Positions 4,652 to 49,416 of a stretch of 64,000 nt of DNA are shown one piece after another (the stretch's first letter is position 1; each line of letters opens with the position of its first letter). The DNA lies in IMG/VR virus record IMGVR_UViG_3300049846_000628, positions 124,001-188,000 of that record. The stretch is one strand, 5' to 3'. A program made the position numbers and the translations under genes. The notes below the pieces were generated by a model that had not been told where the DNA came from, made no database searches, and saw nothing but the letters and a program-made list of their open reading frames with translations.

Positions 4652-5392
4652 TCAATATTCAATAAGTAAATTCCAAATTTTTGTTTTCTTTCTTCTTGCT
4701 ACTGAAAGATTACTTGCAATTTTATTGATAGGTAATGTTTTATTTTTCATTCGACTGAAAACAAACTCATAATGATCCTTAACCCAACTTCTTAGGTTAT
4801 ATCCTTTCCATACTTGACCAGTTAAAGTATCTGTAATTGTATAAGATTTATGATTTGGTTCGGAGGCATTTTTAAATCTACTGATCCATCTCAAATTTGT
4901 ATAATGATTGTTTAATTTATTTCCATCGATATGATCAATTTCTGCATGATGCTCTGAATTTGGTATAAAAGTCTCTGCAACTAATTGATGAATAGATTTC
5001 TTAATTTGTTTGTAGTTATTGTTTTCATCTCTAATTGAAATGTTGATGCATTCATACCGATGCTCAGGATATCTTGCATGTCCTCTAAATGCTGGTTTGA
5101 GGTAAATTAGTCCATACTCATTTATTTCTCCATATTTTCCAGTTCTATCATACTTACCCGGTCTTCGGTATGCTTTACCATCCTCTGTGATGTAGTATCC
5201 AGGATATTGTGTTTCTTTCATATCCTCAGGTATTTTTACATCAGGGTAATTGTAAGTTACTTTCTGTTTTGGTTTTGCAATCGGAATATTCCATGTTTCT
5301 CTGGGTTTTTTTAAGTAAACCCATTTGCCGTCCTTTTTAATAAATTGATTTCCATGTTTATCTGTTCTGATTGTCCCCTCTGGATATCTCAT
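4652..5392 (-). CDS. HNH homing endonuclease (free-standing)
   Basis: SIHQLVAETFIPN..EIDHIDGNKLNNHYTNLRW; AT-rich. Confidence 0.88.
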   Translation of the reverse strand: MRYPEGTIRTDKHGNQFIKKDGKWVYLKKPRETWNIPIAKPKQKVTYNYPDVKIPEDMKETQYPGYYITEDGKAYRRPGKYDRTGKYGEINEYGLIYLKPAFRGHARYPEHRYECINISIRDENNNYKQIKKSIHQLVAETFIPNSEHHAEIDHIDGNKLNNHYTNLRWISRFKNASEPNHKSYTITDTLTGQVWKGYNLRSWVKDHYEFVFSRMKNKTLPINKIASNLSVARRKKTKIWNLLIEY

Positions 5393-5625
5393 AGTATTAT
5401 TAAGGTTTTTTGGATAAATTTTTTGCGAAAAAAATTTTGAATTCGTCTGTATTTTGTTTTCTATTTTAACATATAATTAGCTGCCTCTCGTAACACTTTA
5501 TAGCCTGCAGGGACCCATTGATTTTAAACACGGGGGCGGGGCACCCGACCGCACCCCCCGTAGAACTGCCGAACACGAACGCATAAGACTGCCCCCCACG
5601 AACGAACGCAGGGGGCGGGGCAGGG

Positions 5626-5802
5626 TCACCCCCACTGAATCGGTTGCACGTCGGCGGCGTGGGTCTCTGCCCACTGGGCGGCGAGCAGGGTGGCGGGGTG
5701 ACCCACGGGGTCGGTGATCCGATTGAACTTGCTGCCGTCGTTACGGTAGGCGACCCACACGGTCTGGCGGTCACGAAGGCGGGTGGCGGGGGAGAAACGC
5801 AT
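5626..5802 (-). CDS. Early small hypothetical protein (58 aa)
   Basis: Hand-translated MRFSPATRLRDRQTVW...PIQWG, own promoter at 5827-5855. Confidence 0.7.
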   Translation of the reverse strand: MRFSPATRLRDRQTVWVAYRNDGSKFNRITDPVGHPATLLAAQWAETHAADVQPIQWG

Positions 5803-5851
5803 TGGGTTCGGGTGTGAACTGAGAGAATTCTACAGGGTCAGGGGGCAGGGG

Positions 5852-6043
5852 TCAATACCCCAGCCAGACCAGAAACTCACCAGCGTCAACCCCGCCGAAG
5901 GCAGCGGTCGTTCCGTAGTCGGTGCGGAAGTCATCCCACAGACCGTGGAGTTTGGCAGCGTATGCCGCTTCGATCCAGAAGATGGTCCCGTTGTCGGGGT
6001 TGGTGATGGAGGCGATCTGACTGGGGAAGCAGGGGTCGGTCAT
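5852..6043 (-). CDS. Early small hypothetical protein
   Basis: 63-aa ORF directly behind promoter at 6066-6095. Confidence 0.75.
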   Translation of the reverse strand: MTDPCFPSQIASITNPDNGTIFWIEAAYAAKLHGLWDDFRTDYGTTAAFGGVDAGEFLVWLGY

Positions 6044-6100
6044 CGGGTGCCTTGCGGTTGAGAGAATTCTACAGGGTCAGGGGGCAGGGCGTCAACCTGC

Positions 6101-6265
6101 TCACCAGAGCAGGTCCGCGATTGACTGCAGGCGCTTGGCACGGGTTGCCAGTTCCTTAAGGATGGCCCGCTCCTCCTTGGCAGTGGGGTTGCCTTCCCAC
6201 AACCACTCCTCCAGTTGGAAGGAGGTCATGTCGTCGAAGGCGGTGGCGATGGTTCCGTCCAGCAC
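6101..6265 (-). CDS. Early small hypothetical protein (54 aa, GTG start)
   Basis: Hand-translated MLDGTIATAFDDMTSFQLEEWLW...ADLLW; GGAG RBS; own promoter. Confidence 0.65.
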   Translation of the reverse strand: MLDGTIATAFDDMTSFQLEEWLWEGNPTAKEERAILKELATRAKRLQSIADLLW

Positions 6266-6336
6266 GGTGCGCTCCGTTGGTTTGCTCTGGAATTCTACAG
6301 GGTCGGGGGCGGGAGGTCAACCCACCCCCTGGCGGA

Positions 6337-6561
6337 TCAGACCGCCACCCAGTAGGACTTGCCGTTGATCTCCTGCTGTTCTGCCATAATGTAGGAGGCA
6401 GATCCCATGCTACCGCGCCAACCCTGAACCTGGAAGTAGCACTCCTCCAGGGAGTCCTGATAGGCAAGGGTGCTGGTGATCTTACCATCCTGCACGTGCG
6501 CCACAGCGTAGGGATAGCGTTCGGGGGAGAGGATGGTCAGCAGAGGGGTGGGGGCGGTCAT
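6337..6561 (-). CDS. Early small hypothetical protein
   Basis: Start reassigned to MTAPTP at 6561 behind TGnTACAAT (6591-6599). Confidence 0.7.
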   Translation of the reverse strand: MTAPTPLLTILSPERYPYAVAHVQDGKITSTLAYQDSLEECYFQVQGWRGSMGSASYIMAEQQEINGKSYWVAV

Positions 6562-6601
6562 CGGTCGGGGGTGTCGGTTGAACTGAGAGTATTGTAGCAG
6601 G

Positions 6602-6826
6602 TCAGCGGCGCTCGGCGTTGAAGTCCTGCAGTCCCTTAAGGATGCCCTCCAGGAAGGCGGTGCCGATGCCCTCCCAGAATTTGGGGTCGCGGACCAGTTC
6701 AGCAATGGCAGCGAACCAGTCAGCAGGGGTCGCCGCGGCCAACTGTTCGCGCTCTGCAGGAGTCAGGTCTGCCATCATCTGATTCCAGTCGTTCAGCAGT
6801 TGGGTTTCCAGGTTCGGGCGGGTCAT
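6602..6826 (-). CDS. Early small hypothetical protein
   Basis: 74-aa ORF behind TGnTACAAT (6849-6857). Confidence 0.75.
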   Translation of the reverse strand: MTRPNLETQLLNDWNQMMADLTPAEREQLAAATPADWFAAIAELVRDPKFWEGIGTAFLEGILKGLQDFNAERR

Positions 6827-6872
6827 CGGGTCCGTTGCGGTTGAGAGTATTGTAGCAGATGGGGCGGACCCC

Positions 6873-7058
6873 TCAGATCATCACAGTGGTGGGCAGTGCC
6901 CGAACGATGGGGGAGTGGTGGCGGTAGCAGAACTCCCGCAGATCGTGGATGCTCTCACCAGCGAAGTCATCAGCGGTAAAGGTCCAACCGTGGAACTCAC
7001 GGTCGATCTCAGTCAGGGTGTGAGCGATCAGGGAGCGGAGGTTCTGAGCGGTAGTCAT
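6873..7058 (-). CDS. Early small hypothetical protein
   Basis: 61-aa ORF behind TATACT at 7081-7086. Confidence 0.72.
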   Translation of the reverse strand: MTTAQNLRSLIAHTLTEIDREFHGWTFTADDFAGESIHDLREFCYRHHSPIVRALPTTVMI

Positions 7059-7129
7059 CGGTTTCGTTTGAACTGAGATCAGTATAAGGGGTTGGGGTGG
7101 GGTCTCCGGAGACCCCGTGTGCCAGTGCC

Positions 7130-7318
7130 TCAGGCGTCCATCCCCATCGCATCCCGCAGGATGTTGTAGGCGTTCAGGTAGTAGTCTGCGTCAGCACCCT
7201 TACCAGCGACGCGGCAATCGACTGCCAGGCAGAGCACGGCGGTGCGGATAGTGCTCCACTGTGCCTCAGTCAGGGTGATGGAGCAGAGGTCGTTGGGGAG
7301 GACGTTGGTGCGGGTCAT
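7130..7318 (-). CDS. Early small hypothetical protein
   Basis: 62 aa; own promoter; stop inside palindrome 7118-7141. Confidence 0.75.
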   Translation of the reverse strand: MTRTNVLPNDLCSITLTEAQWSTIRTAVLCLAVDCRVAGKGADADYYLNAYNILRDAMGMDA

Positions 7319-7388
7319 CGGTCGTTTGCTTCGGTTCCCTCAGTATAGAGGCAAAAGGGAGGGGTCGTCCCCCTCCGTTGTGCCACTA

Positions 7389-7523
7389 TCAGAATTGGAT
7401 TTCTTCGGCGGTCGGCTGGGCATCGGGCATGGTATCATCCTCTGCGATCGTTTCCAGGATCTGCAGGATGCTGTCGCCGTTGCTGCCTTGGCGGAGCAGG
7501 GACATGGCAAGGTCGCGGGTCAT
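7389..7523 (-). CDS. Early small hypothetical protein (44 aa)
   Basis: Hand-translated MTRDLAMSLLRQGSNGDSILQILETIAEDD...EIQF. Confidence 0.6.
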   Translation of the reverse strand: MTRDLAMSLLRQGSNGDSILQILETIAEDDTMPDAQPTAEEIQF

Positions 7524-7581
7524 TTGAGAATCAGAGTAAAGGTTGCTGAGCAGTTTAAAGTCGTGCTCAGGACTGATAGAT

Positions 7582-7833
7582 TCAGGAGTCGAAAACGTCG
7601 CCGTTGATCTCAGCGCGGTTGATCTTAGGGTCGTCCCACTTTACACCGTCAGGGGTTTCTTTGCTGCCGCAATCATAGAATGCTTCCAGAAGTTCTTCAT
7701 AGCAGCAGATGTCATTCTCCTGAATGAAGTTGTAGATGCTTTCATCATTCTCAATCCAGAGCACCACGTTCCAGGTCTCATAATTGGTCCAACCGTTGTA
7801 GGTCTTGGTGGGAGCGGTGAGGGTGGCGGTCAT
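7582..7833 (-). CDS. Early hypothetical protein (YNGWTNYETW motif)
   Basis: YNGWTNYETWNV.LWI.NDE motif seen in many phage proteins; own promoter. Confidence 0.82.
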   Translation of the reverse strand: MTATLTAPTKTYNGWTNYETWNVVLWIENDESIYNFIQENDICCYEELLEAFYDCGSKETPDGVKWDDPKINRAEINGDVFDS

Positions 7834-7905
7834 TGGGGTTCGGTTCGGAACTTGTTTAGTATAGGGGGCGGGAGGTGCCCCCTGGTGGGTCAGTGTGCCA
7901 GTGCC

Positions 7906-8106
7906 TCAGGCGGCACAAGCGGCAGGGGTCAGGGTGACTTCTACGCTACCGTCGATCGCCAGCAGCGCCGCGTCGATGGCATCCAGGCGGGCTTCCACAA
8001 TGGAAGGCGTGAAGTGCTCAGGATGCTTCACTGCCAGACTCAGCAGCTCACCCTTCCAGGAGATCAGGGCAGTGCGGACGGTGGCGGTGGGGAGGGTCGC
8101 GGTCAT
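7906..8106 (-). CDS. Early small hypothetical protein
   Basis: 66 aa; own promoter; stop inside palindrome 7894-7917. Confidence 0.72.
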   Translation of the reverse strand: MTATLPTATVRTALISWKGELLSLAVKHPEHFTPSIVEARLDAIDAALLAIDGSVEVTLTPAACAA

Positions 8107-8139
8107 CGGGGTCGTTTGATCTGAGAGTATTCTACAGGG

Positions 8140-8310
8140 TCAGCGGGTCTGCCCGCAGTAGGAAGGGGACACTTTACAGAGTGCCTCTGCCTGCCGCTCC
8201 TGGTGCGCGTTGATGGTAGCGACTGCCTCCAGTGCCCAGGCACCTGCCACAATGCTCACCATGGCGAAGCACATAATGGCGAGAGAGTTCTGAAAGGAAC
8301 GTTCGGTCAT
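8140..8310 (-). CDS. Early small membrane protein (56 aa)
   Basis: Hand-translated MTERSFQNSLAIMCFAMVSIVAGAWALEAV..., one hydrophobic segment; own promoter. Confidence 0.6.
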   Translation of the reverse strand: MTERSFQNSLAIMCFAMVSIVAGAWALEAVATINAHQERQAEALCKVSPSYCGQTR

Positions 8311-8345
8311 CGGTTCGGTTCGGTTGATGGAATCAGTCTACAGGG

Positions 8346-8513
8346 TCAACGGGAGATGAGGTCGCCTGCAGTGTACAGTGCCTCAGCTGTCACACTGCGA
8401 ATCGGTTGCATCGGACCCCAGAACGTGTAGAGCAGGGCACCGCCGATCAGGAGTTTAATCATGGTAGCACGGTGAAACTCAGGAGAGCGGGAGCGGGTCA
8501 GGGAGCGCATCAT
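8346..8513 (-). CDS. Early small membrane protein (55 aa)
   Basis: Hand-translated MMRSLTRSRSPEFHRATMIKLLIGGALLYTFWG...; ATGA overlap with upstream ORF. Confidence 0.55.
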   Translation of the reverse strand: MMRSLTRSRSPEFHRATMIKLLIGGALLYTFWGPMQPIRSVTAEALYTAGDLISR

Positions 8514-8671
8514 CGCTGCAGTTGGGCAAGGGAGGAAGGGGCGATGTGGGAGGGGGAACCACAGGAGCGGTAGAAGTCTACCATGCGGTCTGCTTCCTCT
8601 TTAGTGGTGAACCACTGCGAGCGCCACTCACAGGCATTGTAGGGGGTCTGGTAGCGGACTTCGAAGCGCAT
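8510..8671 (-). CDS. Early small hypothetical protein (53 aa)
   Basis: Hand-translated MRFEVRYQTPYNACEWRSQWFTTKEEADRMVDFYRSCGSP...; own promoter. Confidence 0.7.
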   Translation of the reverse strand: MRFEVRYQTPYNACEWRSQWFTTKEEADRMVDFYRSCGSPSHIAPSSLAQLQR

Positions 8672-8739
8672 CGGTGTCGTTTGCTGATGGAATCAGTATA
8701 AGGGGCGGGAGGTGCCCCCAGAGAGGTTAGGTTGACGGT

Positions 8740-12765: not shown

Positions 12766-12951
12766 TCAGAAGGGATCGATTTCCTTCGTGGTAGCATACA
12801 CTTCCTCATCACCTTCGAGTTCCAGTAACTCTTTCCAGTCCATATGTTCTACATCTAGATCATCATAACACATGATGTCTAGATTAACACGTACAAGGCG
12901 TTTCTGTACTAACATGGCGTCTAGATGTGTATGTGTACTAGATTGTATCAT
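12766..12951 (-). CDS. Small acidic hypothetical protein
   Basis: ORF track; ATGA overlap with 12948-13088. Confidence 0.6.
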   Translation of the reverse strand: MIQSSTHTHLDAMLVQKRLVRVNLDIMCYDDLDVEHMDWKELLELEGDEEVYATTKEIDPF

Positions 12952-13249
12952 GCATAATGACGATACGCAAGATCTTGATAATCATGCGCGTCTCGTGCAT
13001 AGTCCTCGTCGAGATCCTGTGTATAATACTCGTCGAGATCCGCGTAATCGTTTGTGTATGTATAGTCGAGATCGTAGTCGTCGTACATAGCTCGTCGAGA
13101 TTGTGTGACTAGATGATTATAGCATGAATCTAGACTAGATGCAAGAACTAGATTTGGGGTCTAGACTAGATTATGATAATATATATGAGTTCTCGACTAG
13201 ATTTGTGTTGATATGATAATATAATGCTATTGTGATATCTCGACTAGAT
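12855..13249 (+). repeat. Cluster of about 15 same-strand C[T/G]AGAT motifs; long form CT[C/A]G[T/A]C[G/T]AGAT
   Basis: Long copies at 13005, 13029, 13091, 13130, 13161, 13192, 13239; short copies at 12855, 12879, 12921, 12938, 13067, 13109, 13148. Confidence 0.85.
12948..13088 (-). CDS. Asp/Tyr-rich peptide (46 aa)
   Basis: Hand-translated MYDDYDLDYTYTNDYADLDEYYTQDLDEDYARDAHDYQDLAYRHYA; promoter TTGCAT-N17-TATAAT at 13144-13116. Confidence 0.6.
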   Translation of the reverse strand: MYDDYDLDYTYTNDYADLDEYYTQDLDEDYARDAHDYQDLAYRHYA

Positions 13250-13292
13250 TTTATGAGAATTGTGTGCGTCTTGTGACCTTCTGCGCGGGGGG

Positions 13293-13321
13293 TTGACTTT
13301 GAGAGCTTCGTGTGTTATAAT
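13293..13321 (+). promoter_or_regulatory. Near-consensus sigma70 promoter facing the tandem array
   Basis: TTGACT-N17-TATAAT with extended -10 TG; opposite to all neighbouring genes. Confidence 0.85.
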
Positions 13322-13348
13322 GCGCTCGCTAAGCTTGCATAAGGATCA

Positions 13349-13524
13349 GACATTTATAAGGTTTTAATGGGGTCTTTATAAGGTCTTTATAAGGTCTTTA
13401 TAAGGTCTTTATAAGGTCTTTATAAGGTCTTTATAAGGTCTTTATAAGGTCTTTATAAGGTCTTTATAAGGTTTTAATGGGGTTTTTATAAGGTTTTAAT
13501 GGGGTTTTAATGAGGTATTAAACA
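13349..13524. repeat. 11-bp tandem array
   Basis: Nine perfect GGTCTTTATAA (13371-13469) flanked in phase by GGTTTTAATGG-type variants. Confidence 0.98.
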
Positions 13525-13626
13525 GATAATATAAGCATATAACACTAACATTATACAACCGAATAAAAAACAATAATATATTTTTTAATATATTTTTTAA
13601 TTGATTTTAACCTTTTTTATTGATTT

Positions 13627-13797
13627 TTATGCCTTTTGGAGGTTAGAAAGTTCGTGTTCTGCTCTTCTTTCTAACTCTCCGTGTACGTGTCTACGTTGTT
13701 GACGACTCGCAATCGCATTCTGTCTAGCACGGAACATTGAGAGTGAAGTTTGTGGAGCAGAAGGAATCTGTTCCATAAATTGTTGAAACGTTTTCAT
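13627..13797 (-). CDS. Small late protein with MKTFQQF N-terminus
   Basis: Hand-translated 56 aa; ATAAATA late promoter near 13824-13830; N-terminus resembles T4-like internal head protein signals. Confidence 0.65.
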   Translation of the reverse strand: MKTFQQFMEQIPSAPQTSLSMFRARQNAIASRQQRRHVHGELERRAEHELSNLQKA

Positions 13798-18775: not shown

Positions 18776-19756
18776 TTAGTATAGTGCCTCCACCAGCGCA
18801 TTCGACTGCTGCTGTGCCAGTTCATCAACTGTCTCCTGGGCAATGCTGATTGCGTCTGGATTCACATCCATCGTGATACAATTTCGCCCCAAACCAAAAG
18901 CGGAAATTGCTGTCGTTCCAGATCCACAGAAGGGGTCCAGCACCCATCCATCAGGAGGACAAGACGACTTTATGATACGTTCTAACAGTTTCAGAGGCTT
19001 TTGTGTAGGATATTTACGCTTATTCTGTTCACTTCTGCTGATAAAGTATACATCATCCCACAAATTCTGCACTGGGACACCTTTAGACTCGTGAGAATAG
19101 ATTTTTTTGTAAATATTGTTTGCTCCGTAGTGCAGACGACCCTGGGCGTCCAGTTCTTCCAGTTTTTCCCTTGTTATACGGAATCCATACTGAGGATTAT
19201 AACCTTTATACTCAAAACGGGCACAAGGACGACTCTTTTCACCAGTCACCTTTGCGAGAGCATAATATCCAACTTCATCTTTATTCTTGAAGCTGTTCTC
19301 AGCATACACTGGATCAAGAGATGTATATTCAACTTCAAAGTATGGTTTGCCTTTCTGCAGCACCATAATACTATCTACAATGTTACCCCAACCATTCTTG
19401 AGGTTGTTCTTTGGTCCACTACGTTTCCAAGAGATGTTAGTGTAGAAAGCATCCCTAACTTTAGGATCTACCTTAGAAAGGACTAAAGCATTACCAATAA
19501 AGTTATTGTGGGCATATAACCACCCATTCTTATTCAACTTAGCAAAACAGTTATTGATGACTTCTGCATACCAGTCAATATAGTCATCAAAGGAACTCCA
19601 ATTATCACTAAAACCTTTCTCTTGACCATCTTCCTCCTGCATTGTAAAATCCCGCTGCAATCCAAAGGGAGGGTCCATATAAATCAGATCAAATGTCTGG
19701 TCAATGGTATTGAGTTCTTCAACAGGCTTCTGAAGAATCTTAATCTCAGGCATCAC
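18776..19756 (-). CDS. N6-adenine/N4-cytosine DNA methyltransferase (beta class)
   Basis: LIYMDPPF, YPTQKPLKLLERII, VLDPFCGSGTT. Confidence 0.92.
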   Translation of the reverse strand: MMPEIKILQKPVEELNTIDQTFDLIYMDPPFGLQRDFTMQEEDGQEKGFSDNWSSFDDYIDWYAEVINNCFAKLNKNGWLYAHNNFIGNALVLSKVDPKVRDAFYTNISWKRSGPKNNLKNGWGNIVDSIMVLQKGKPYFEVEYTSLDPVYAENSFKNKDEVGYYALAKVTGEKSRPCARFEYKGYNPQYGFRITREKLEELDAQGRLHYGANNIYKKIYSHESKGVPVQNLWDDVYFISRSEQNKRKYPTQKPLKLLERIIKSSCPPDGWVLDPFCGSGTTAISAFGLGRNCITMDVNPDAISIAQETVDELAQQQSNALVEALY

Positions 19757-41324: not shown

Positions 41325-41357
41325 AGGGATTTTCCCATATCTCTTATTTATTTTAAG

Positions 41358-41439
41358 TAGGGCGAGCGGGACTTGAACCCGCAAGGCTTGCGCCACCGGT
41401 TTTTAAGACCGGAATGTTTACCGATTTCATCACCGCCCC
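41358..41439 (-). tRNA. tRNA-Leu(TAA)
   Basis: GGGGCGG/TCGCCCT acceptor, CCGGT-CTTAAAA-ACCGG anticodon arm, long V arm, GCGGG-TTCAAGT-CCCGC. Confidence 0.95.
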
Positions 41440-41452
41440 GTGATGTGAGACC

Positions 41453-41481
41453 ATTATAACTCTTTGAGTCTGAATGGTCAA
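41453..41481 (-). promoter_or_regulatory. Sigma70 promoter for tRNA-Leu
   Basis: TTGACC-N17-TATAAT. Confidence 0.8.
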
Positions 41482-41482
41482 G

Positions 41483-41555
41483 TGCTCCTTGCGTGGATCG
41501 AACACGCCTCAGGCGAATTATGAGTTCGCTGCATTCACCAGATTGCTAAAGGAGC
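41483..41555 (-). tRNA. tRNA with CAT anticodon (elongator Met or Ile2)
   Basis: GCTCCTT/AAGGAGC acceptor, GCGAA-CTCATAA-TTCGC, GCGTG-TTCGATC-CACGC. Confidence 0.93.
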
Positions 41556-41559
41556 AAGG

Positions 41560-41647
41560 TACGAGTGCCTGGATTCGAACCAGGTCAAAGCCGCTAATCT
41601 GGCGGAAAGAGTTTATAAGACTCCTCTGACTACCAAGTCTCACTCGC
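41560..41647 (-). tRNA. Non-canonical tRNA-Ile(TAT) with long variable arm
   Basis: GCGAGTG/CACTCGT acceptor, GGAGT-CTTATAA-ACTCT, CCGC/GCGG V arm, CCTGG-TTCGAAT-CCAGG. Confidence 0.85.
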
Positions 41648-47428: not shown

Positions 47429-49416
47429 TAGACGTAACTTAAATCGGAGAGTAATTTGTTTTTCATAAAGTTATTTACCAAGAAAGATTCGTCAGTTGAA
47501 AGGTCAAGATCAAGAGATCCACCAGATGCTGCTACAACTTGCTGAGTCGCTGGTTGTCTATCATCAATCACAATAACTTTTCTACCAGTTCTCTCTTGCT
47601 TTACGCCTTCAAGAACACCAGCTAAGTAAGATTGTCCCTCCATATCTACCTCAGCAGCAGTCTGTGTAGCAATACTTGCACCTGCTGGTCTCATTGAGAC
47701 TAATGGTTGAGAGGGTTGTGCGAATCCTTTACCAATTGGTTTATTTGTGAGGAATAGAAGGCGAACGTATTGATCCAACTTAGCAGCATAATTAGGATCA
47801 TCATTGATAGCACCACCACCACGACTACCCTTTTTAGTATCATACTCTAAGTGAATATGTGGTCCAGTAACTCTTCCAGACTTTCCTACTCTTGCAAAAG
47901 AAGTTCCTGCTGGTATTTTTCCAGATTTGATGATTACCGAACTCAAGTGAGCCATTCTTAATTGAATGCCCAAACTTGGAACCCAAACATCTATCAATAA
48001 ACCATAATCACCGTATGTTCCTTGTGCTACAACCTCACAATCAACTCTCAAGGAAATATAAGTTCCAGTAGGTGCTGCAATATCAATTCCTCCGTGACCT
48101 CTACCATCTCCAACAAGACTCGATACCTCAATATAATCAACACCTCTACCTAGAGACTTTGTAAAGACATCACCCTCCCTCAATCTTCTTTGTCCTGCTG
48201 CTCCACCGGTGAGTAATGCAAGTAGTGCTGCTGCAGGCGATCCAAATTGAGATAAAACTTGAGCGGGGGATGGTGTTTGAGATGTTGGTGTAGCAGTTGA
48301 CTTTCCTAGAGGAGTATCCTTCGCCCTATACATTATTTCTATCTCTTTTCTAGAATATTTTGAATATTTCGTCCAAGCACTAGGACCTTGAGTTTTTAAT
48401 ATTCCAATCGCCAATAGATCTTGATTATTTTGATCAAACATATCAGTATCTTTTAATCCAGCAGCAGATTGTGCTGAAGGTAAAGTACCTGGTACAATCT
48501 GATATCTTCCAGCAGCCCATAAAGTTTTTTTAACATTTTGATAATTTTTAACTTCACCAATGGTCATATCAGTAAGATTTTTTCCAAGCCATTTTTTTGA
48601 TCCTCCTGGTCTATCACCAGACTGTCCATTATTGATTGCATTATAATCTCCTCCACTTTCTGGTCCAGAAATAATATCAAGAGCCTGTTTATGAATTGGT
48701 TTTAACTTACTACCAGATACTGAAGGTTGTGCAGATGGTGGAGTTCCAGGAATCCCAGGTATTGTTGATGGTAATTGACCAAAAGCATCAGGAATCTTTT
48801 CTAACTCTTTAAATGGTTGTATGAGAACAGCAAAAGCATCACTAATTCCTCCACCAAGCTCATCAATTGATAGTTTTAAATCATTCAGAGAACTTCTTAC
48901 AAGATATGAACTATCAGAAAAATCAAACTTGGAAATATTAACCAATCCTGCACTAAAAACATTTCCAATGCTAGATATAACTTCAACCAGTTCATCTCCA
49001 TATCCACTTAGAATACTTCCAGCCGCTACAATTCTTTGTGAAAATTGTTCTCCCAAGGAAATCCAAGTTGGTAGATTACTTAATATCCATCCAGCAGAAA
49101 GATAACCAACAAATCCAAGTAATCTATCAGTAATACTTGTACTTCTATCAGATGCTGCTAATAGTCTTGGACCTTTTGGTTTAACAGCAATGAGTGGAGC
49201 TGCTAAACGATCTCTTAAAACATTTCTATTTTCTCTTTCAATTCTTTTTTGTTTTATACTTCTAATATTAGATGATAGATTTCTTTTAGTGGATATATTC
49301 TTATTCAGTAACTTTGATAGATTAATAGCTGTATTTTTAGTTTCCTTCGTCTGCCTTTTTGTGGAAGACACTGAATCAGAAATTTTTTTAAATGAGATAG
49401 AGGGAGATATAGCCAT
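47428..49416 (-). CDS. Tail-associated protein with lysozyme-like and M23 peptidase domains
   Basis: PESGGDYNA..AAGRYQIVPGTL..QD; HGGIDIAA..HLS..GPHIHLE. Confidence 0.82.
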   Translation of the reverse strand: MAISPSISFKKISDSVSSTKRQTKETKNTAINLSKLLNKNISTKRNLSSNIRSIKQKRIERENRNVLRDRLAAPLIAVKPKGPRLLAASDRSTSITDRLLGFVGYLSAGWILSNLPTWISLGEQFSQRIVAAGSILSGYGDELVEVISSIGNVFSAGLVNISKFDFSDSSYLVRSSLNDLKLSIDELGGGISDAFAVLIQPFKELEKIPDAFGQLPSTIPGIPGTPPSAQPSVSGSKLKPIHKQALDIISGPESGGDYNAINNGQSGDRPGGSKKWLGKNLTDMTIGEVKNYQNVKKTLWAAGRYQIVPGTLPSAQSAAGLKDTDMFDQNNQDLLAIGILKTQGPSAWTKYSKYSRKEIEIMYRAKDTPLGKSTATPTSQTPSPAQVLSQFGSPAAALLALLTGGAAGQRRLREGDVFTKSLGRGVDYIEVSSLVGDGRGHGGIDIAAPTGTYISLRVDCEVVAQGTYGDYGLLIDVWVPSLGIQLRMAHLSSVIIKSGKIPAGTSFARVGKSGRVTGPHIHLEYDTKKGSRGGGAINDDPNYAAKLDQYVRLLFLTNKPIGKGFAQPSQPLVSMRPAGASIATQTAAEVDMEGQSYLAGVLEGVKQERTGRKVIVIDDRQPATQQVVAASGGSLDLDLSTDESFLVNNFMKNKLLSDLSYV

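What the first reader, a model, noticed from the sequence alone, without database searches (positions are those of the whole stretch)
13293..13626. Promoter, 11-bp tandem array and AT-rich tract: origin or repeat RNA
Seen: a near-consensus plus-strand promoter fires into about 16 in-phase 11-mers (nine perfect GGTCTTTATAA) and then about 100 bp of very AT-rich DNA, with no ORF. The period is close to one helical turn, and the minus strand reads TATAAAGA, one mismatch from the late promoter TATAAATA. Known: T4 oriF/oriG are a promoter plus unwinding element forming an R-loop, and oriE has iterons. Inference: a transcription-primed origin, or a repetitive RNA/DNA decoy.
Basis: partly seen in the sequence, partly recalled or inferred. 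Interest (0 to 1): 0.75.

Follow-up and report, generated by a model that had tools for sequence, protein, structure and literature searches.

The report
Origin-like control region of a cyanophage
The promoter, 11-base repeat array and AT-rich tract are real and belong to a conserved, undescribed non-coding region of freshwater T4-like cyanophages that looks most like a replication origin, although no experiment shows this yet.

Summary
A TTGACT-17-TATAAT promoter with a TG extension (13293-13321) faces 16 in-phase 11-mers (13349-13524). Nine of them are perfect GGTCTTTATAA. An 85% AT tract follows, and there is no ORF.

The window is part of a 211-kb T4-like cyanomyovirus; its nearest cultured relative is S-SRM01. 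The element occurs once in the genome. It is one member of a family of about 70 distinct elements at the same syntenic spot in related phages. They share four parts:
- a conserved orphan early promoter;
- tandem arrays that vary greatly in unit and copy number but keep a TTTATAAG core and a roughly 10.5-bp (helical) period;
- one of three types of "box" segment;
- an AT-rich block.

In 22 of 69 relatives the boxes are clusters of the cyanobacterial DnaA box TTTTCCACA, spaced 11-12 or 20-22 bp apart. The window's copy has no such boxes.

There is no conserved RNA structure, no Rfam match and no late-promoter match. Metatranscriptome contigs are ambiguous: array words are abundant, but the leader is absent.

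The best reading is a transcription-activated, iteron-type phage origin similar to T4 oriE/oriF (confidence about 0.45). A repeat RNA, a non-origin protein-binding array and neutral repeat expansion remain possible.

The parts
12766..12951 (-). w61: the first conserved small acidic gene of the leftward early unit (phrog_12516). It is the syntenic anchor of the family.
   Evidence: AlphaFold model pLDDT 81, with no helix-rich DNA-binding fold and no PDB match.
12948..13088 (-). w46: a very acidic 46-aa ORF. Its DLDE codons are copies of the leftward iteron.
13005..13250 (-). Second iteron set (ATCTAGTCGAGA / ATCTAGTCTAGA / ATCTCGACGAG, about 7 copies), mixed with -10-like hexamers of the leftward early promoters. 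It occurs only at this locus in the genome.
   Evidence: An RNA contig of the leftward unit ends at 13158.
13283..13321 (+). Orphan early promoter: G-run, TTGACT, 17 nt, TG, TATAAT.
   Evidence: In the family, TTGACA is found in 57 of 69 elements and the TG extension in 64 of 69.
13328..13348 (+). Predicted transcript start and conserved leader (CTTGCATAAGGATC).
   Evidence: The start site is inferred from the -10 position and was not mapped.
13349..13524 (+). Array of 16 in-phase 11-mers. The perfect core of 9 x GGTCTTTATAA lies at 13371-13469.
   Evidence: The same 11-mer occurs in 1, 3 or more, and 4 copies in another lineage.
13536..13559 (+). Class C segment (CATATAACACTAACATTATACAAC). 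It sits where relatives carry the TTCTCA boxes or the DnaA boxes.
13575..13628 (+). Conserved AT-rich block with T-runs about every 12 nt. It is the candidate unwinding element, or alternatively a termination zone.
   Evidence: It was found only in relatives without a homing endonuclease: 16 of 32, against 0 of 27 with one.
13638..13680 (.). 13/14-nt inverted repeat at the boundary with the converging leftward unit.
   Evidence: RNA contigs end at 13685 and start at 13686.

Best explanation
The finding is the window's copy of a conserved non-coding control region of freshwater T4-like cyanophages. It most likely serves as an origin for the early, origin-dependent round of phage DNA replication.

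Proposed mechanism (inferred):
1. Host RNA polymerase fires early from the strong orphan promoter.
2. Transcription runs through a helically phased array of TTTATAAG-type direct repeats. The array either bends the DNA or seats a still unknown protein on one face of the helix.
3. Transcription then enters the AT-rich block, where opening or a primer RNA lets the phage replisome start.

In many relatives a cluster of host DnaA boxes sits between the array and the AT block, so host DnaA probably helps there. The window's lineage has lost the boxes and expanded one 11-mer to 16 copies by slippage.

Shown: the anatomy, the conservation, the phasing, the DnaA-box clusters in relatives, and the copy-number variability. 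Inferred: promoter activity, protein binding, unwinding and replication.
For: 1. Conserved synteny. About 70 distinct elements lie next to the w61/w46 genes and face away from them. They were retrieved both by a DNA pattern and, without sequence bias, through the flanking protein.

2. The promoter is conserved although no gene follows it in the variants without a homing endonuclease. TG before the -10 occurs in 64 of 69 elements and TTGACA in 57 of 69. The same type of promoter, some copies with the G-run, serves this genome's early genes on the other strand.

3. Helical phasing. Array periods are 10-11, 20-23, 31-34, 41-45 and 54-55. The mean autocorrelation over 46 elements peaks at lags 10-11, 20-21 and 30-34, and dips at 5, 15-16 and 26-28. 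Spacings of the core motif, of the DnaA boxes (11-12 or 20-22) and of the TTCTCA boxes (23-24) agree with this.

4. DnaA boxes. Perfect TTTTCCACA occurs 26 times in 15.3 kb of element sequence, always in one orientation, against 9 times in 162 kb of flanks. Members carry 3-5 boxes each. The cultured phage DSL-LC03 has 7 in 460 bp of the homologous gap. TTTTCCACA is the cyanobacterial DnaA box (PMC4674748).

5. The inverted TTCTCA/TGAGAA boxes are conserved as sequence, with no compensatory changes. This points to DNA recognition and not to an RNA stem.

6. RNA folds of 16 relatives show no conserved structure; z-scores run from -4.3 to +1.8.

7. The AT block is 85% AT in the window, and the 80 nt after the last box average 76% AT across the family.

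8. The architecture matches described origins: T4 oriE (early promoter plus evenly spaced 12-nt repeats) and oriF/oriG (promoter plus AT-rich unwinding element).
Against: - There are no replication data of any kind.
- The window's own element, and its whole genome, lack a DnaA-box cluster.
- GC skew is set by gene direction and marks no origin. The genes on both sides run the same way.
- The array zone is not G-rich on the RNA-like strand across the family: mean skew is -0.04, positive in 29 of 69 elements. The AT block is T-rich on that strand, which would make a weak RNA-DNA hybrid.
- Relatives with a homing endonuclease lack the AT block (0 of 27), so that block is dispensable or replaceable.
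- No initiator gene was recognised next to the element. w61 gave no DNA-binding fold.
- In metatranscriptome X10 the leader is not assembled, although early genes 170 nt away have depth 66.
Confidence: 0.45

Rival explanations
1. A repeat RNA gene. The promoter makes a short non-coding RNA whose tandem UAUAAG(G) units bind, and so soak up, a host or phage RNA-binding protein. Alternatively, in this lineage the RNA folds into a long double-stranded hairpin. Copy number would tune the capacity.
For: - The promoter is conserved and no ORF follows it.
- The repeat motif keeps one orientation relative to the promoter: 76 forward against 5 reverse.
- The window's array RNA folds into stacked 10-bp helices, -57 kcal/mol, z = -6.6, whereas the DNA fold is weak.
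- In metatranscriptome X10 a collapsed array unitig has depth 409, about 59 per copy. The intergenic sequence beside it is absent or at depth 2.3 or less, and the flanking gene contigs stop exactly at 13158 and 13686. DNA carry-over would not give this pattern.
Against: - The leader that should join the promoter to the array is missing from the same run. The array words could also come from other phage lineages that carry the same 11-mer.
- No RNA structure is conserved in 16 relatives.
- There is no Rfam match.
- DnaA boxes, and box pairs without compensatory changes, are DNA signals lying inside the supposed RNA.
- A 10.5-nt period has no obvious meaning for RNA.
- No terminator was found by the scan.
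Confidence: 0.2
2. A DNA protein-binding array that is not an origin. Two versions are possible: an operator or roadblock array that lets an unknown repeat-binding protein (and DnaA in relatives) control the strong promoter and any downstream homing endonuclease, or a sink that titrates host DNA-binding proteins as the phage genome multiplies.
For: - The direct repeats and boxes are in helical phase.
- DnaA boxes are also used by bacteria as regulatory and titration sites (established knowledge).
- 27 of 59 relatives have a GIY-YIG endonuclease gene directly downstream that this promoter would drive.
- An array of 11-bp direct repeats beside a promoter is the layout of plasmid R1 parC, which is bound by ParR (PMC2241845).
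Against: - No repeat-binding protein is encoded next to it.
- A sink needs no promoter, yet the promoter is the most conserved part.
- The variants without an endonuclease have nothing to regulate downstream.
- A lytic T4-like phage has no known need for a partition site.
Confidence: 0.17
3. A neutral slippage product. The promoter and motif are functional, for whatever purpose, but the 16-copy array itself is only a recent, selectively neutral expansion of a slippage-prone 11-mer in a decaying copy that has already lost its boxes.
For: - Nine identical copies indicate a recent expansion.
- The same 11-mer varies from 1 to 4 copies among otherwise near-identical phages of another lineage.
- Units and copy numbers differ between almost all relatives.
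- The window belongs to the rare class without boxes, which looks derived from class A.
Against: - Arrays are present in most family members and keep both the core motif and the helical period. This argues for selection on having an array.
- The promoter and the AT block are intact in the window.
Confidence: 0.15
4. An assembly artefact: the array, or its length, was created by the assembler.
For: Short-word contigs break in the perfect array, and the stored stretch of a near-identical phage ends at its edge.
Against: - The same array end and flanks occur in an independent sample (L005) and in several public runs.
- Related arrays occur in dozens of independent assemblies.
- The periodic stretch is only 102 nt, which is short enough for long assembly words or single reads to span.
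Confidence: 0.03

Closest known systems
Bacteriophage T4 oriE
   Same: A host-type early promoter that needs no phage factor, together with a cluster of evenly spaced short direct repeats (12 nt in T4, 11 nt here). Similar repeats are kept at syntenic places in related phages (PMC3016281).
   Different: - The genome position is different; T4 oriE lies by repEA/repEB.
- No repE homologues were looked for.
- Even in T4 the role of the repeats is unproven.
- Here the repeat unit and copy number change between close relatives, and host DnaA boxes occur in many members.
Bacteriophage T4 oriF and oriG
   Same: A promoter followed by an AT-rich downstream unwinding element. The transcript forms an R-loop that primes the leading strand, and the unwinding element is not sequence-specific.
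   Different: - The T4 origins use MotA-dependent middle promoters and fit within about 100 bp.
- Here the promoter is a full -35/-10 early type.
- The AT block lies about 250 nt downstream, behind an array.
- It is T-rich on the RNA-like strand.
Iteron-type theta origins of plasmids and phages (R6K gamma, RK2 oriV, pSC101, P1 oriR, lambda ori)
   Same: Direct repeats spaced by whole helical turns, DnaA boxes and an AT-rich region side by side. Transcription through or near the origin activates it (established knowledge; cites R6K for comparison).
   Different: - Those origins have a dedicated Rep/O initiator gene next to the iterons; none was recognised here.
- The window's copy has no DnaA boxes.
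- T4-like phages are not known to use DnaA.
Plasmid R1 parC centromere bound by ParR
   Same: Arrays of 11-bp direct repeats (two sets of five) at a promoter, which wrap a small repeat-binding protein (PMC2241845).
   Different: - There is no ParR-like or ParM-like gene.
- The promoter lies upstream of one array, not between two.
- The phage is lytic.
ToxI antitoxin RNA and the expandable pseudo-ToxI repeats of phage PhiTE (own knowledge, not checked here)
   Same: A promoter firing into tandem repeats with no ORF, where repeat number changes by slippage and matters for function.
   Different: - ToxI units are about 36 nt, fold into a defined structure, and precede a terminator and a toxin gene.
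- Here the units are 10-55 nt, no structure is conserved and no toxin gene follows.

Membership tests
T4 oriF/oriG-type origin | Promoter active before late transcription | tested here: inconclusive
   The sequence is a near-consensus extended -10 promoter of the kind this genome uses for early genes. No transcript start could be shown.
T4 oriF/oriG-type origin | AT-rich unwinding element directly downstream, within a unit of about 100 bp | tested here: inconclusive
   An 85% AT block exists, but it starts about 250 nt after the promoter. It is absent from relatives that carry a homing endonuclease.
T4 oriF/oriG-type origin | Persistent R-loop, and replication of a plasmid carrying the element during infection | not testable with these tools
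   This needs infected cells.
T4 oriE-type origin | Evenly spaced short direct repeats beside an early-mode promoter | tested here: met
   16 in-phase 11-mers lie 28 nt after the -10.
T4 oriE-type origin | Nascent DNA starts at the locus | not testable with these tools
   No marker-frequency data. GC skew is uninformative.
Iteron-type theta origin | Direct repeats in helical phase | tested here: met
   Period 11 in the window. The family autocorrelation peaks at 10-11, 20-21 and 30-34.
Iteron-type theta origin | DnaA boxes | tested here: not met
   There is no cluster in the window or in its genome. The feature is met in 22 of 69 relatives and in DSL-LC03.
Iteron-type theta origin | Adjacent initiator (Rep) gene | tested here: not met
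   The neighbours w46 and w61 are small acidic proteins with no Pfam match above threshold and, for w61, no fold match either. PHROGs gives w61 only an unknown-function family and w46 nothing.
ParR/parC-type centromere | Repeat-binding ribbon-helix-helix protein and motor gene in the same operon | tested here: not met
   No such genes flank the element. The w61 model has almost no helix.
T4-type late promoter (decoy) | Exact TATAAATA | tested here: not met
   The window units read TATAAAGA. Family-wide, only 3 of about 100 copies are exact.
OmpR-family repeat sites (HLR1 of RpaB, cyanobacterial Pho box) | KTTACAWW at a 10-bp period, or YTTAAYYW at an 11-bp period | tested here: not met
   2 and 6 matches respectively in 7.5 kb of array zones, against 76 for TTTATAAG.
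Described RNA families (Rfam 15) | Score at or above the family's gathering threshold | tested here: not met
   Only tRNAs pass in the window. In the element there are only weak hairpin-type hits far below threshold.
Type III toxin-antitoxin antitoxin RNA | Repeats of about 34-48 nt, then a terminator and a toxin gene | tested here: not met
   The unit is 11 nt, no terminator was found and no plus-strand gene follows.

The most novel reading that the evidence does not exclude
The array is transcribed and survives as a processed, stable repeat RNA, either protein-bound or as a long G.U-containing hairpin. It would act as a phage-made sponge whose capacity is tuned by slippage in copy number. 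The DNA of the same locus would serve independently as a DnaA-assisted origin in relatives. The one piece of expression evidence fits this reading: array words at depth 409 with no leader or trailer in a metatranscriptome.
Probability: 0.12. Interest if true: 0.85.

Novelty: new variant of a known kind. Interest (0 to 1): 0.6.

Why it matters
- **Open question.** In the literature searched here, the only origin statement found for a T4-like cyanophage is a GC-skew prediction for Syn9 (PMC2984593). In T4 itself the role of the oriE repeats is still undefined.
- **A concrete candidate.** This region is conserved and easy to recognise. It has an orphan early promoter, phased repeats and, in many members, the host's own DnaA boxes.
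- **Testable systems.** Two cultured phages carry it: S-SRM01 and DSL-LC03.
- **If DnaA is used.** That would be an unexpected dependence of a T4-type replisome on the host initiator. It would tie phage replication to the host's replication state.
- **Practical points.** The repeat array is hypervariable and breaks assemblies. Homing endonucleases of two kinds repeatedly occupy the same spot.

Tried and rejected
- **Rfam.** Searches at gathering and at permissive thresholds gave nothing beyond tRNAs and chance hairpin hits.
- **Near-identity BLAST.** No match in cultured phages. Distant BLAST led to S-SRM01 only.
- **Whole-genome GC skew.** It follows gene direction and has no origin-like turning point.
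- **Late-promoter decoy.** Rejected on motif counts.
- **HLR1 (RpaB) and Pho-box readings of the repeat.** Rejected on motif counts.
- **G-rich R-loop signature.** Present in the window (skew +0.21) but not across the family.
- **Conserved RNA structure.** Rejected. The window's long hairpin is specific to its lineage, and the box pair shows no compensatory change.
- **Intrinsic terminator after the array.** None found.
- **w61 as a ribbon-helix-helix repeat binder.** The sequence looked suggestive, but Pfam, the protein atlas, the AlphaFold model and Foldseek gave no support.
- I rebuilt the alignment without it.
- **DSL-LC03 and S-SKS1 homologues of w61.** They are not next to a comparable gap. 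The DSL-LC03 element lies elsewhere in that genome.
- **Metagenome scan for copy-number variants.** It returned only two contigs.
- **Literature searches.** Searches for cyanophage DnaA boxes or iterons found nothing relevant.

Full report
**What is there.** The window is bases 124001-188000 of a 211,201-bp virus record. It is a T4-like cyanomyovirus. TATAAATA late promoters stand before genes on the minus strand, 26 against 2 on the plus strand. The nearest named relative is the freshwater Synechococcus phage S-SRM01 of the Kyanoviridae.

At 13293-13321 there is a TTGACT-17-TATAAT promoter with a TG extension and a G-run before it. Twenty-eight bases after the -10, sixteen 11-mers follow in one register (13349-13524), nine of them perfect GGTCTTTATAA. 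Then come a 24-nt segment, an 85% AT block with T-runs about every 12 nt (13575-13628), and an inverted repeat at 13638-13680. No ORF covers any of this. The element occurs once in the genome.

**Setting.** Genes on both sides run leftward. To the left, a string of small early genes starts with two acidic ORFs, here called w46 and w61. It is served by promoters embedded in a second set of about seven iterons of the ATCTAGTCGAGA type, which are also unique to this locus. To the right, another leftward unit ends near 13690. The plus-strand promoter is thus an orphan that fires against the grain. Of the 24 near-consensus promoters in the genome, 21 are on the minus strand, several with the same G-run.

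**A family, not a one-off.** A pattern taken from the window and S-SRM01 found 15 more viral contigs. An unbiased search through the flanking protein w61 gave 80 loci. After removing near-duplicates, about 70 distinct elements share the same plan:
- an AT-rich stretch and a G-run upstream;
- TTGACA in 57 of 69 elements, and TG before the -10 in 64 of 69;
- a short leader of the CACAAGA or CATAAGA type;
- tandem arrays;
- a "box" segment;
- an AT-rich block.

Synteny with w46/w61 on one side, and often with the same conserved genes on the other, is kept.

**The arrays.** Units and copy numbers differ between almost all relatives: 2 to more than 25 copies, and units of 10, 11, 20-23, 31-34, 41-45 or 54-55 nt. 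What persists is a core of TTTATAAG, 76 times forward against 5 reverse, and a period close to one helical turn. Averaged over 46 distinct elements, self-similarity peaks at lags 10-11, 20-21 and 30-34 and is lowest at 5, 15-16 and 26-28.

The window's own 11-mer is a variable-number repeat. In a separate lineage with otherwise near-identical flanks it occurs in one copy (L007, L009), at least three (L004) and four (L214). The nine identical copies in the window are therefore a recent expansion.

**The boxes.** The segment after the array comes in three kinds:
- **Class A (33 of 69):** two direct copies and one inverted copy of TTCTCA, 23-24 bp apart. The hexamers are invariant in 33 distinct members, while changes beside them are never compensated. 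This is sequence conservation, not an RNA stem.
- **Class B (22 of 69):** three to five copies of TTTTCCACA, spaced 11-12 or 20-22 bp. This 9-mer is the DnaA box of cyanobacteria, including Synechococcus PCC 7942 (PMC4674748). Perfect boxes are about 30 times denser in the elements than in their flanks, and all point the same way. The cultured phage DSL-LC03 has seven within 460 bp of the homologous gap.
- **Class C (5 of 69, including the window):** no boxes, only a segment that looks like a class A remnant.

The window's genome has no DnaA-box cluster anywhere.

**The AT block and the endonucleases.** Of the 59 distinct relatives with enough downstream sequence, 27 carry a GIY-YIG homing endonuclease gene of one of two kinds on the plus strand right after the element. 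None of these 27 has the T-run block, which is found in 16 of the 32 without an endonuclease. The endonucleases therefore insert into or replace this block, and they would be expressed from the orphan promoter. The state without an endonuclease, as in the window, has no gene for the promoter to serve.

**RNA or DNA?** The window's array RNA could fold into a long stack of 10-bp helices, because CUUUAUAAGG pairs with itself through G.U pairs (-57 kcal/mol, z = -6.6). As DNA the fold is weak. This is peculiar to the lineage: sixteen relatives give z-scores from -4.3 to +1.8, with only three below -2. Rfam has nothing.

Public metatranscriptomes contain the phage. In run X10 the contigs of the two gene units stop exactly at 13158 and start exactly at 13686, so the signal is RNA and not DNA carry-over. 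Between these points only a 41-nt collapsed array unitig is present, at depth 409, which is about 59 per copy. The leader is not assembled. That could mean a processed, stable array RNA, or reads from other lineages with the same 11-mer.

**Most likely function.** The parts that are conserved, or that recur in relatives, are an orphan early promoter, direct repeats and boxes all set in helical phase, host DnaA boxes in a third of members, and an AT-rich block. Together these are the parts list of a replication origin. T4 supplies close precedents. oriE has an early promoter and evenly spaced 12-nt repeats of still unknown role. oriF and oriG are a promoter plus a non-specific AT-rich unwinding element, where the transcript forms the priming R-loop (PMC3016281). 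Iteron plasmids combine phased repeats, DnaA boxes and an AT-rich region.

I therefore read the finding as the window's copy of a transcription-activated, iteron-type origin, with confidence about 0.45. The weak points are:
- there are no replication data;
- the window has no boxes;
- no initiator gene was found; w61 has no recognisable DNA-binding fold;
- there is no family-wide G-richness that would favour R-loops;
- the AT block is lost in endonuclease carriers.

**Rivals.**
- A repeat RNA (0.2) explains the promoter and the X10 depth, but not the DnaA boxes, the uncompensated box pairs or the helical period.
- A non-origin binding array that regulates the promoter or titrates host proteins (0.17) explains the phasing, but not why the promoter is the best-conserved part where nothing lies downstream.
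- Neutral expansion of the 11-mer in a decaying, box-less copy (0.15) is compatible with any of these and concerns only the array's length.
- An assembly artefact is very unlikely, given independent samples and dozens of related arrays.

**Novelty.** In the searchable literature I found nothing on DnaA boxes or iterons in cyanophages. The S-SRM01 paper does not mention the region. A 2010 review knows only a GC-skew prediction of one origin in Syn9. The kind of element, a phage origin with promoter, repeats and unwinding element, is known. This family, its host DnaA boxes, its three interchangeable box types and its hypervariable phased arrays are not. I rate it a new variant of a known kind, with interest 0.6.

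Noticed in passing
window 5400-8700: A 3.3-kb island of about 60% GC in a 38% GC genome, with positive GC skew and no ORF longer than 193 aa. It holds 5-8 scattered copies of a 48-58-nt cassette. On the minus strand the cassette reads like an extended -10 (TGTAGAAT) followed by an ATG. This looks like a string of tiny genes that each carry the same promoter cassette. Only about 200 nt match other cyanophages.
   Followed up: partly
window 13005-13250, minus strand: A second iteron set (ATCTAGTCGAGA / ATCTAGTCTAGA / ATCTCGACGAG, about 7 copies), unique in the genome and conserved in relatives. Three copies lie inside the 46-aa acidic ORF 12948-13088, where they encode DLDE. The others sit at the -35 position of weak leftward promoters and may be an activator or repressor site.
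   Followed up: partly
L218 (Synechococcus phage DSL-LC03, OR003938.1 80113-80717): A 600-bp gap in a cultured freshwater cyanophage. It holds the family promoter, class A boxes and seven perfect DnaA boxes, four of them direct plus an inverted one in a second, divergent unit.
   Followed up: partly
L091/L114 and L004: Some relatives carry a further DnaA-box cluster or inverted DnaA-box pairs on the far side of the w46-w61 gene pair, so these two small genes are bracketed by boxes.
   Followed up: no
L219 (S-RIM2, KX349232.1 about 48125-48156): A marine cyanomyovirus has an inverted pair of perfect DnaA boxes 23 bp apart at the end of a small gene. It was not examined further.
   Followed up: no
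window 13089-13324: One low-depth contig (depth 3.4) of DNA run X4 joins 13089 to 13324, skipping the leftward iteron region and the plus-strand promoter. It may be a strain variant or a mis-join; only 25 nt support one side.
   Followed up: no
L215 (JACLAC010003546.1, about 780-1030): A GC-rich contig from an unrelated source carries a degenerate array of the same GGTCTTTATAAGG-type unit.
   Followed up: no
window 13360-13520: The degenerate units GGTTTTAATGG create three- to four-codon mini-ORFs (ATG GGG TCT TTA TAA and similar) a few bases after an AAGG. They are not conserved in relatives.
   Followed up: partly
window 41357-41647, 4652-5392 and 18776-19756: A cluster of three tRNA genes (Leu-TAA, Met-CAT and one called Ile with anticodon TAT), an HNH endonuclease gene and an N6/N4 DNA methylase gene lie in the same accessory region.
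   Followed up: no
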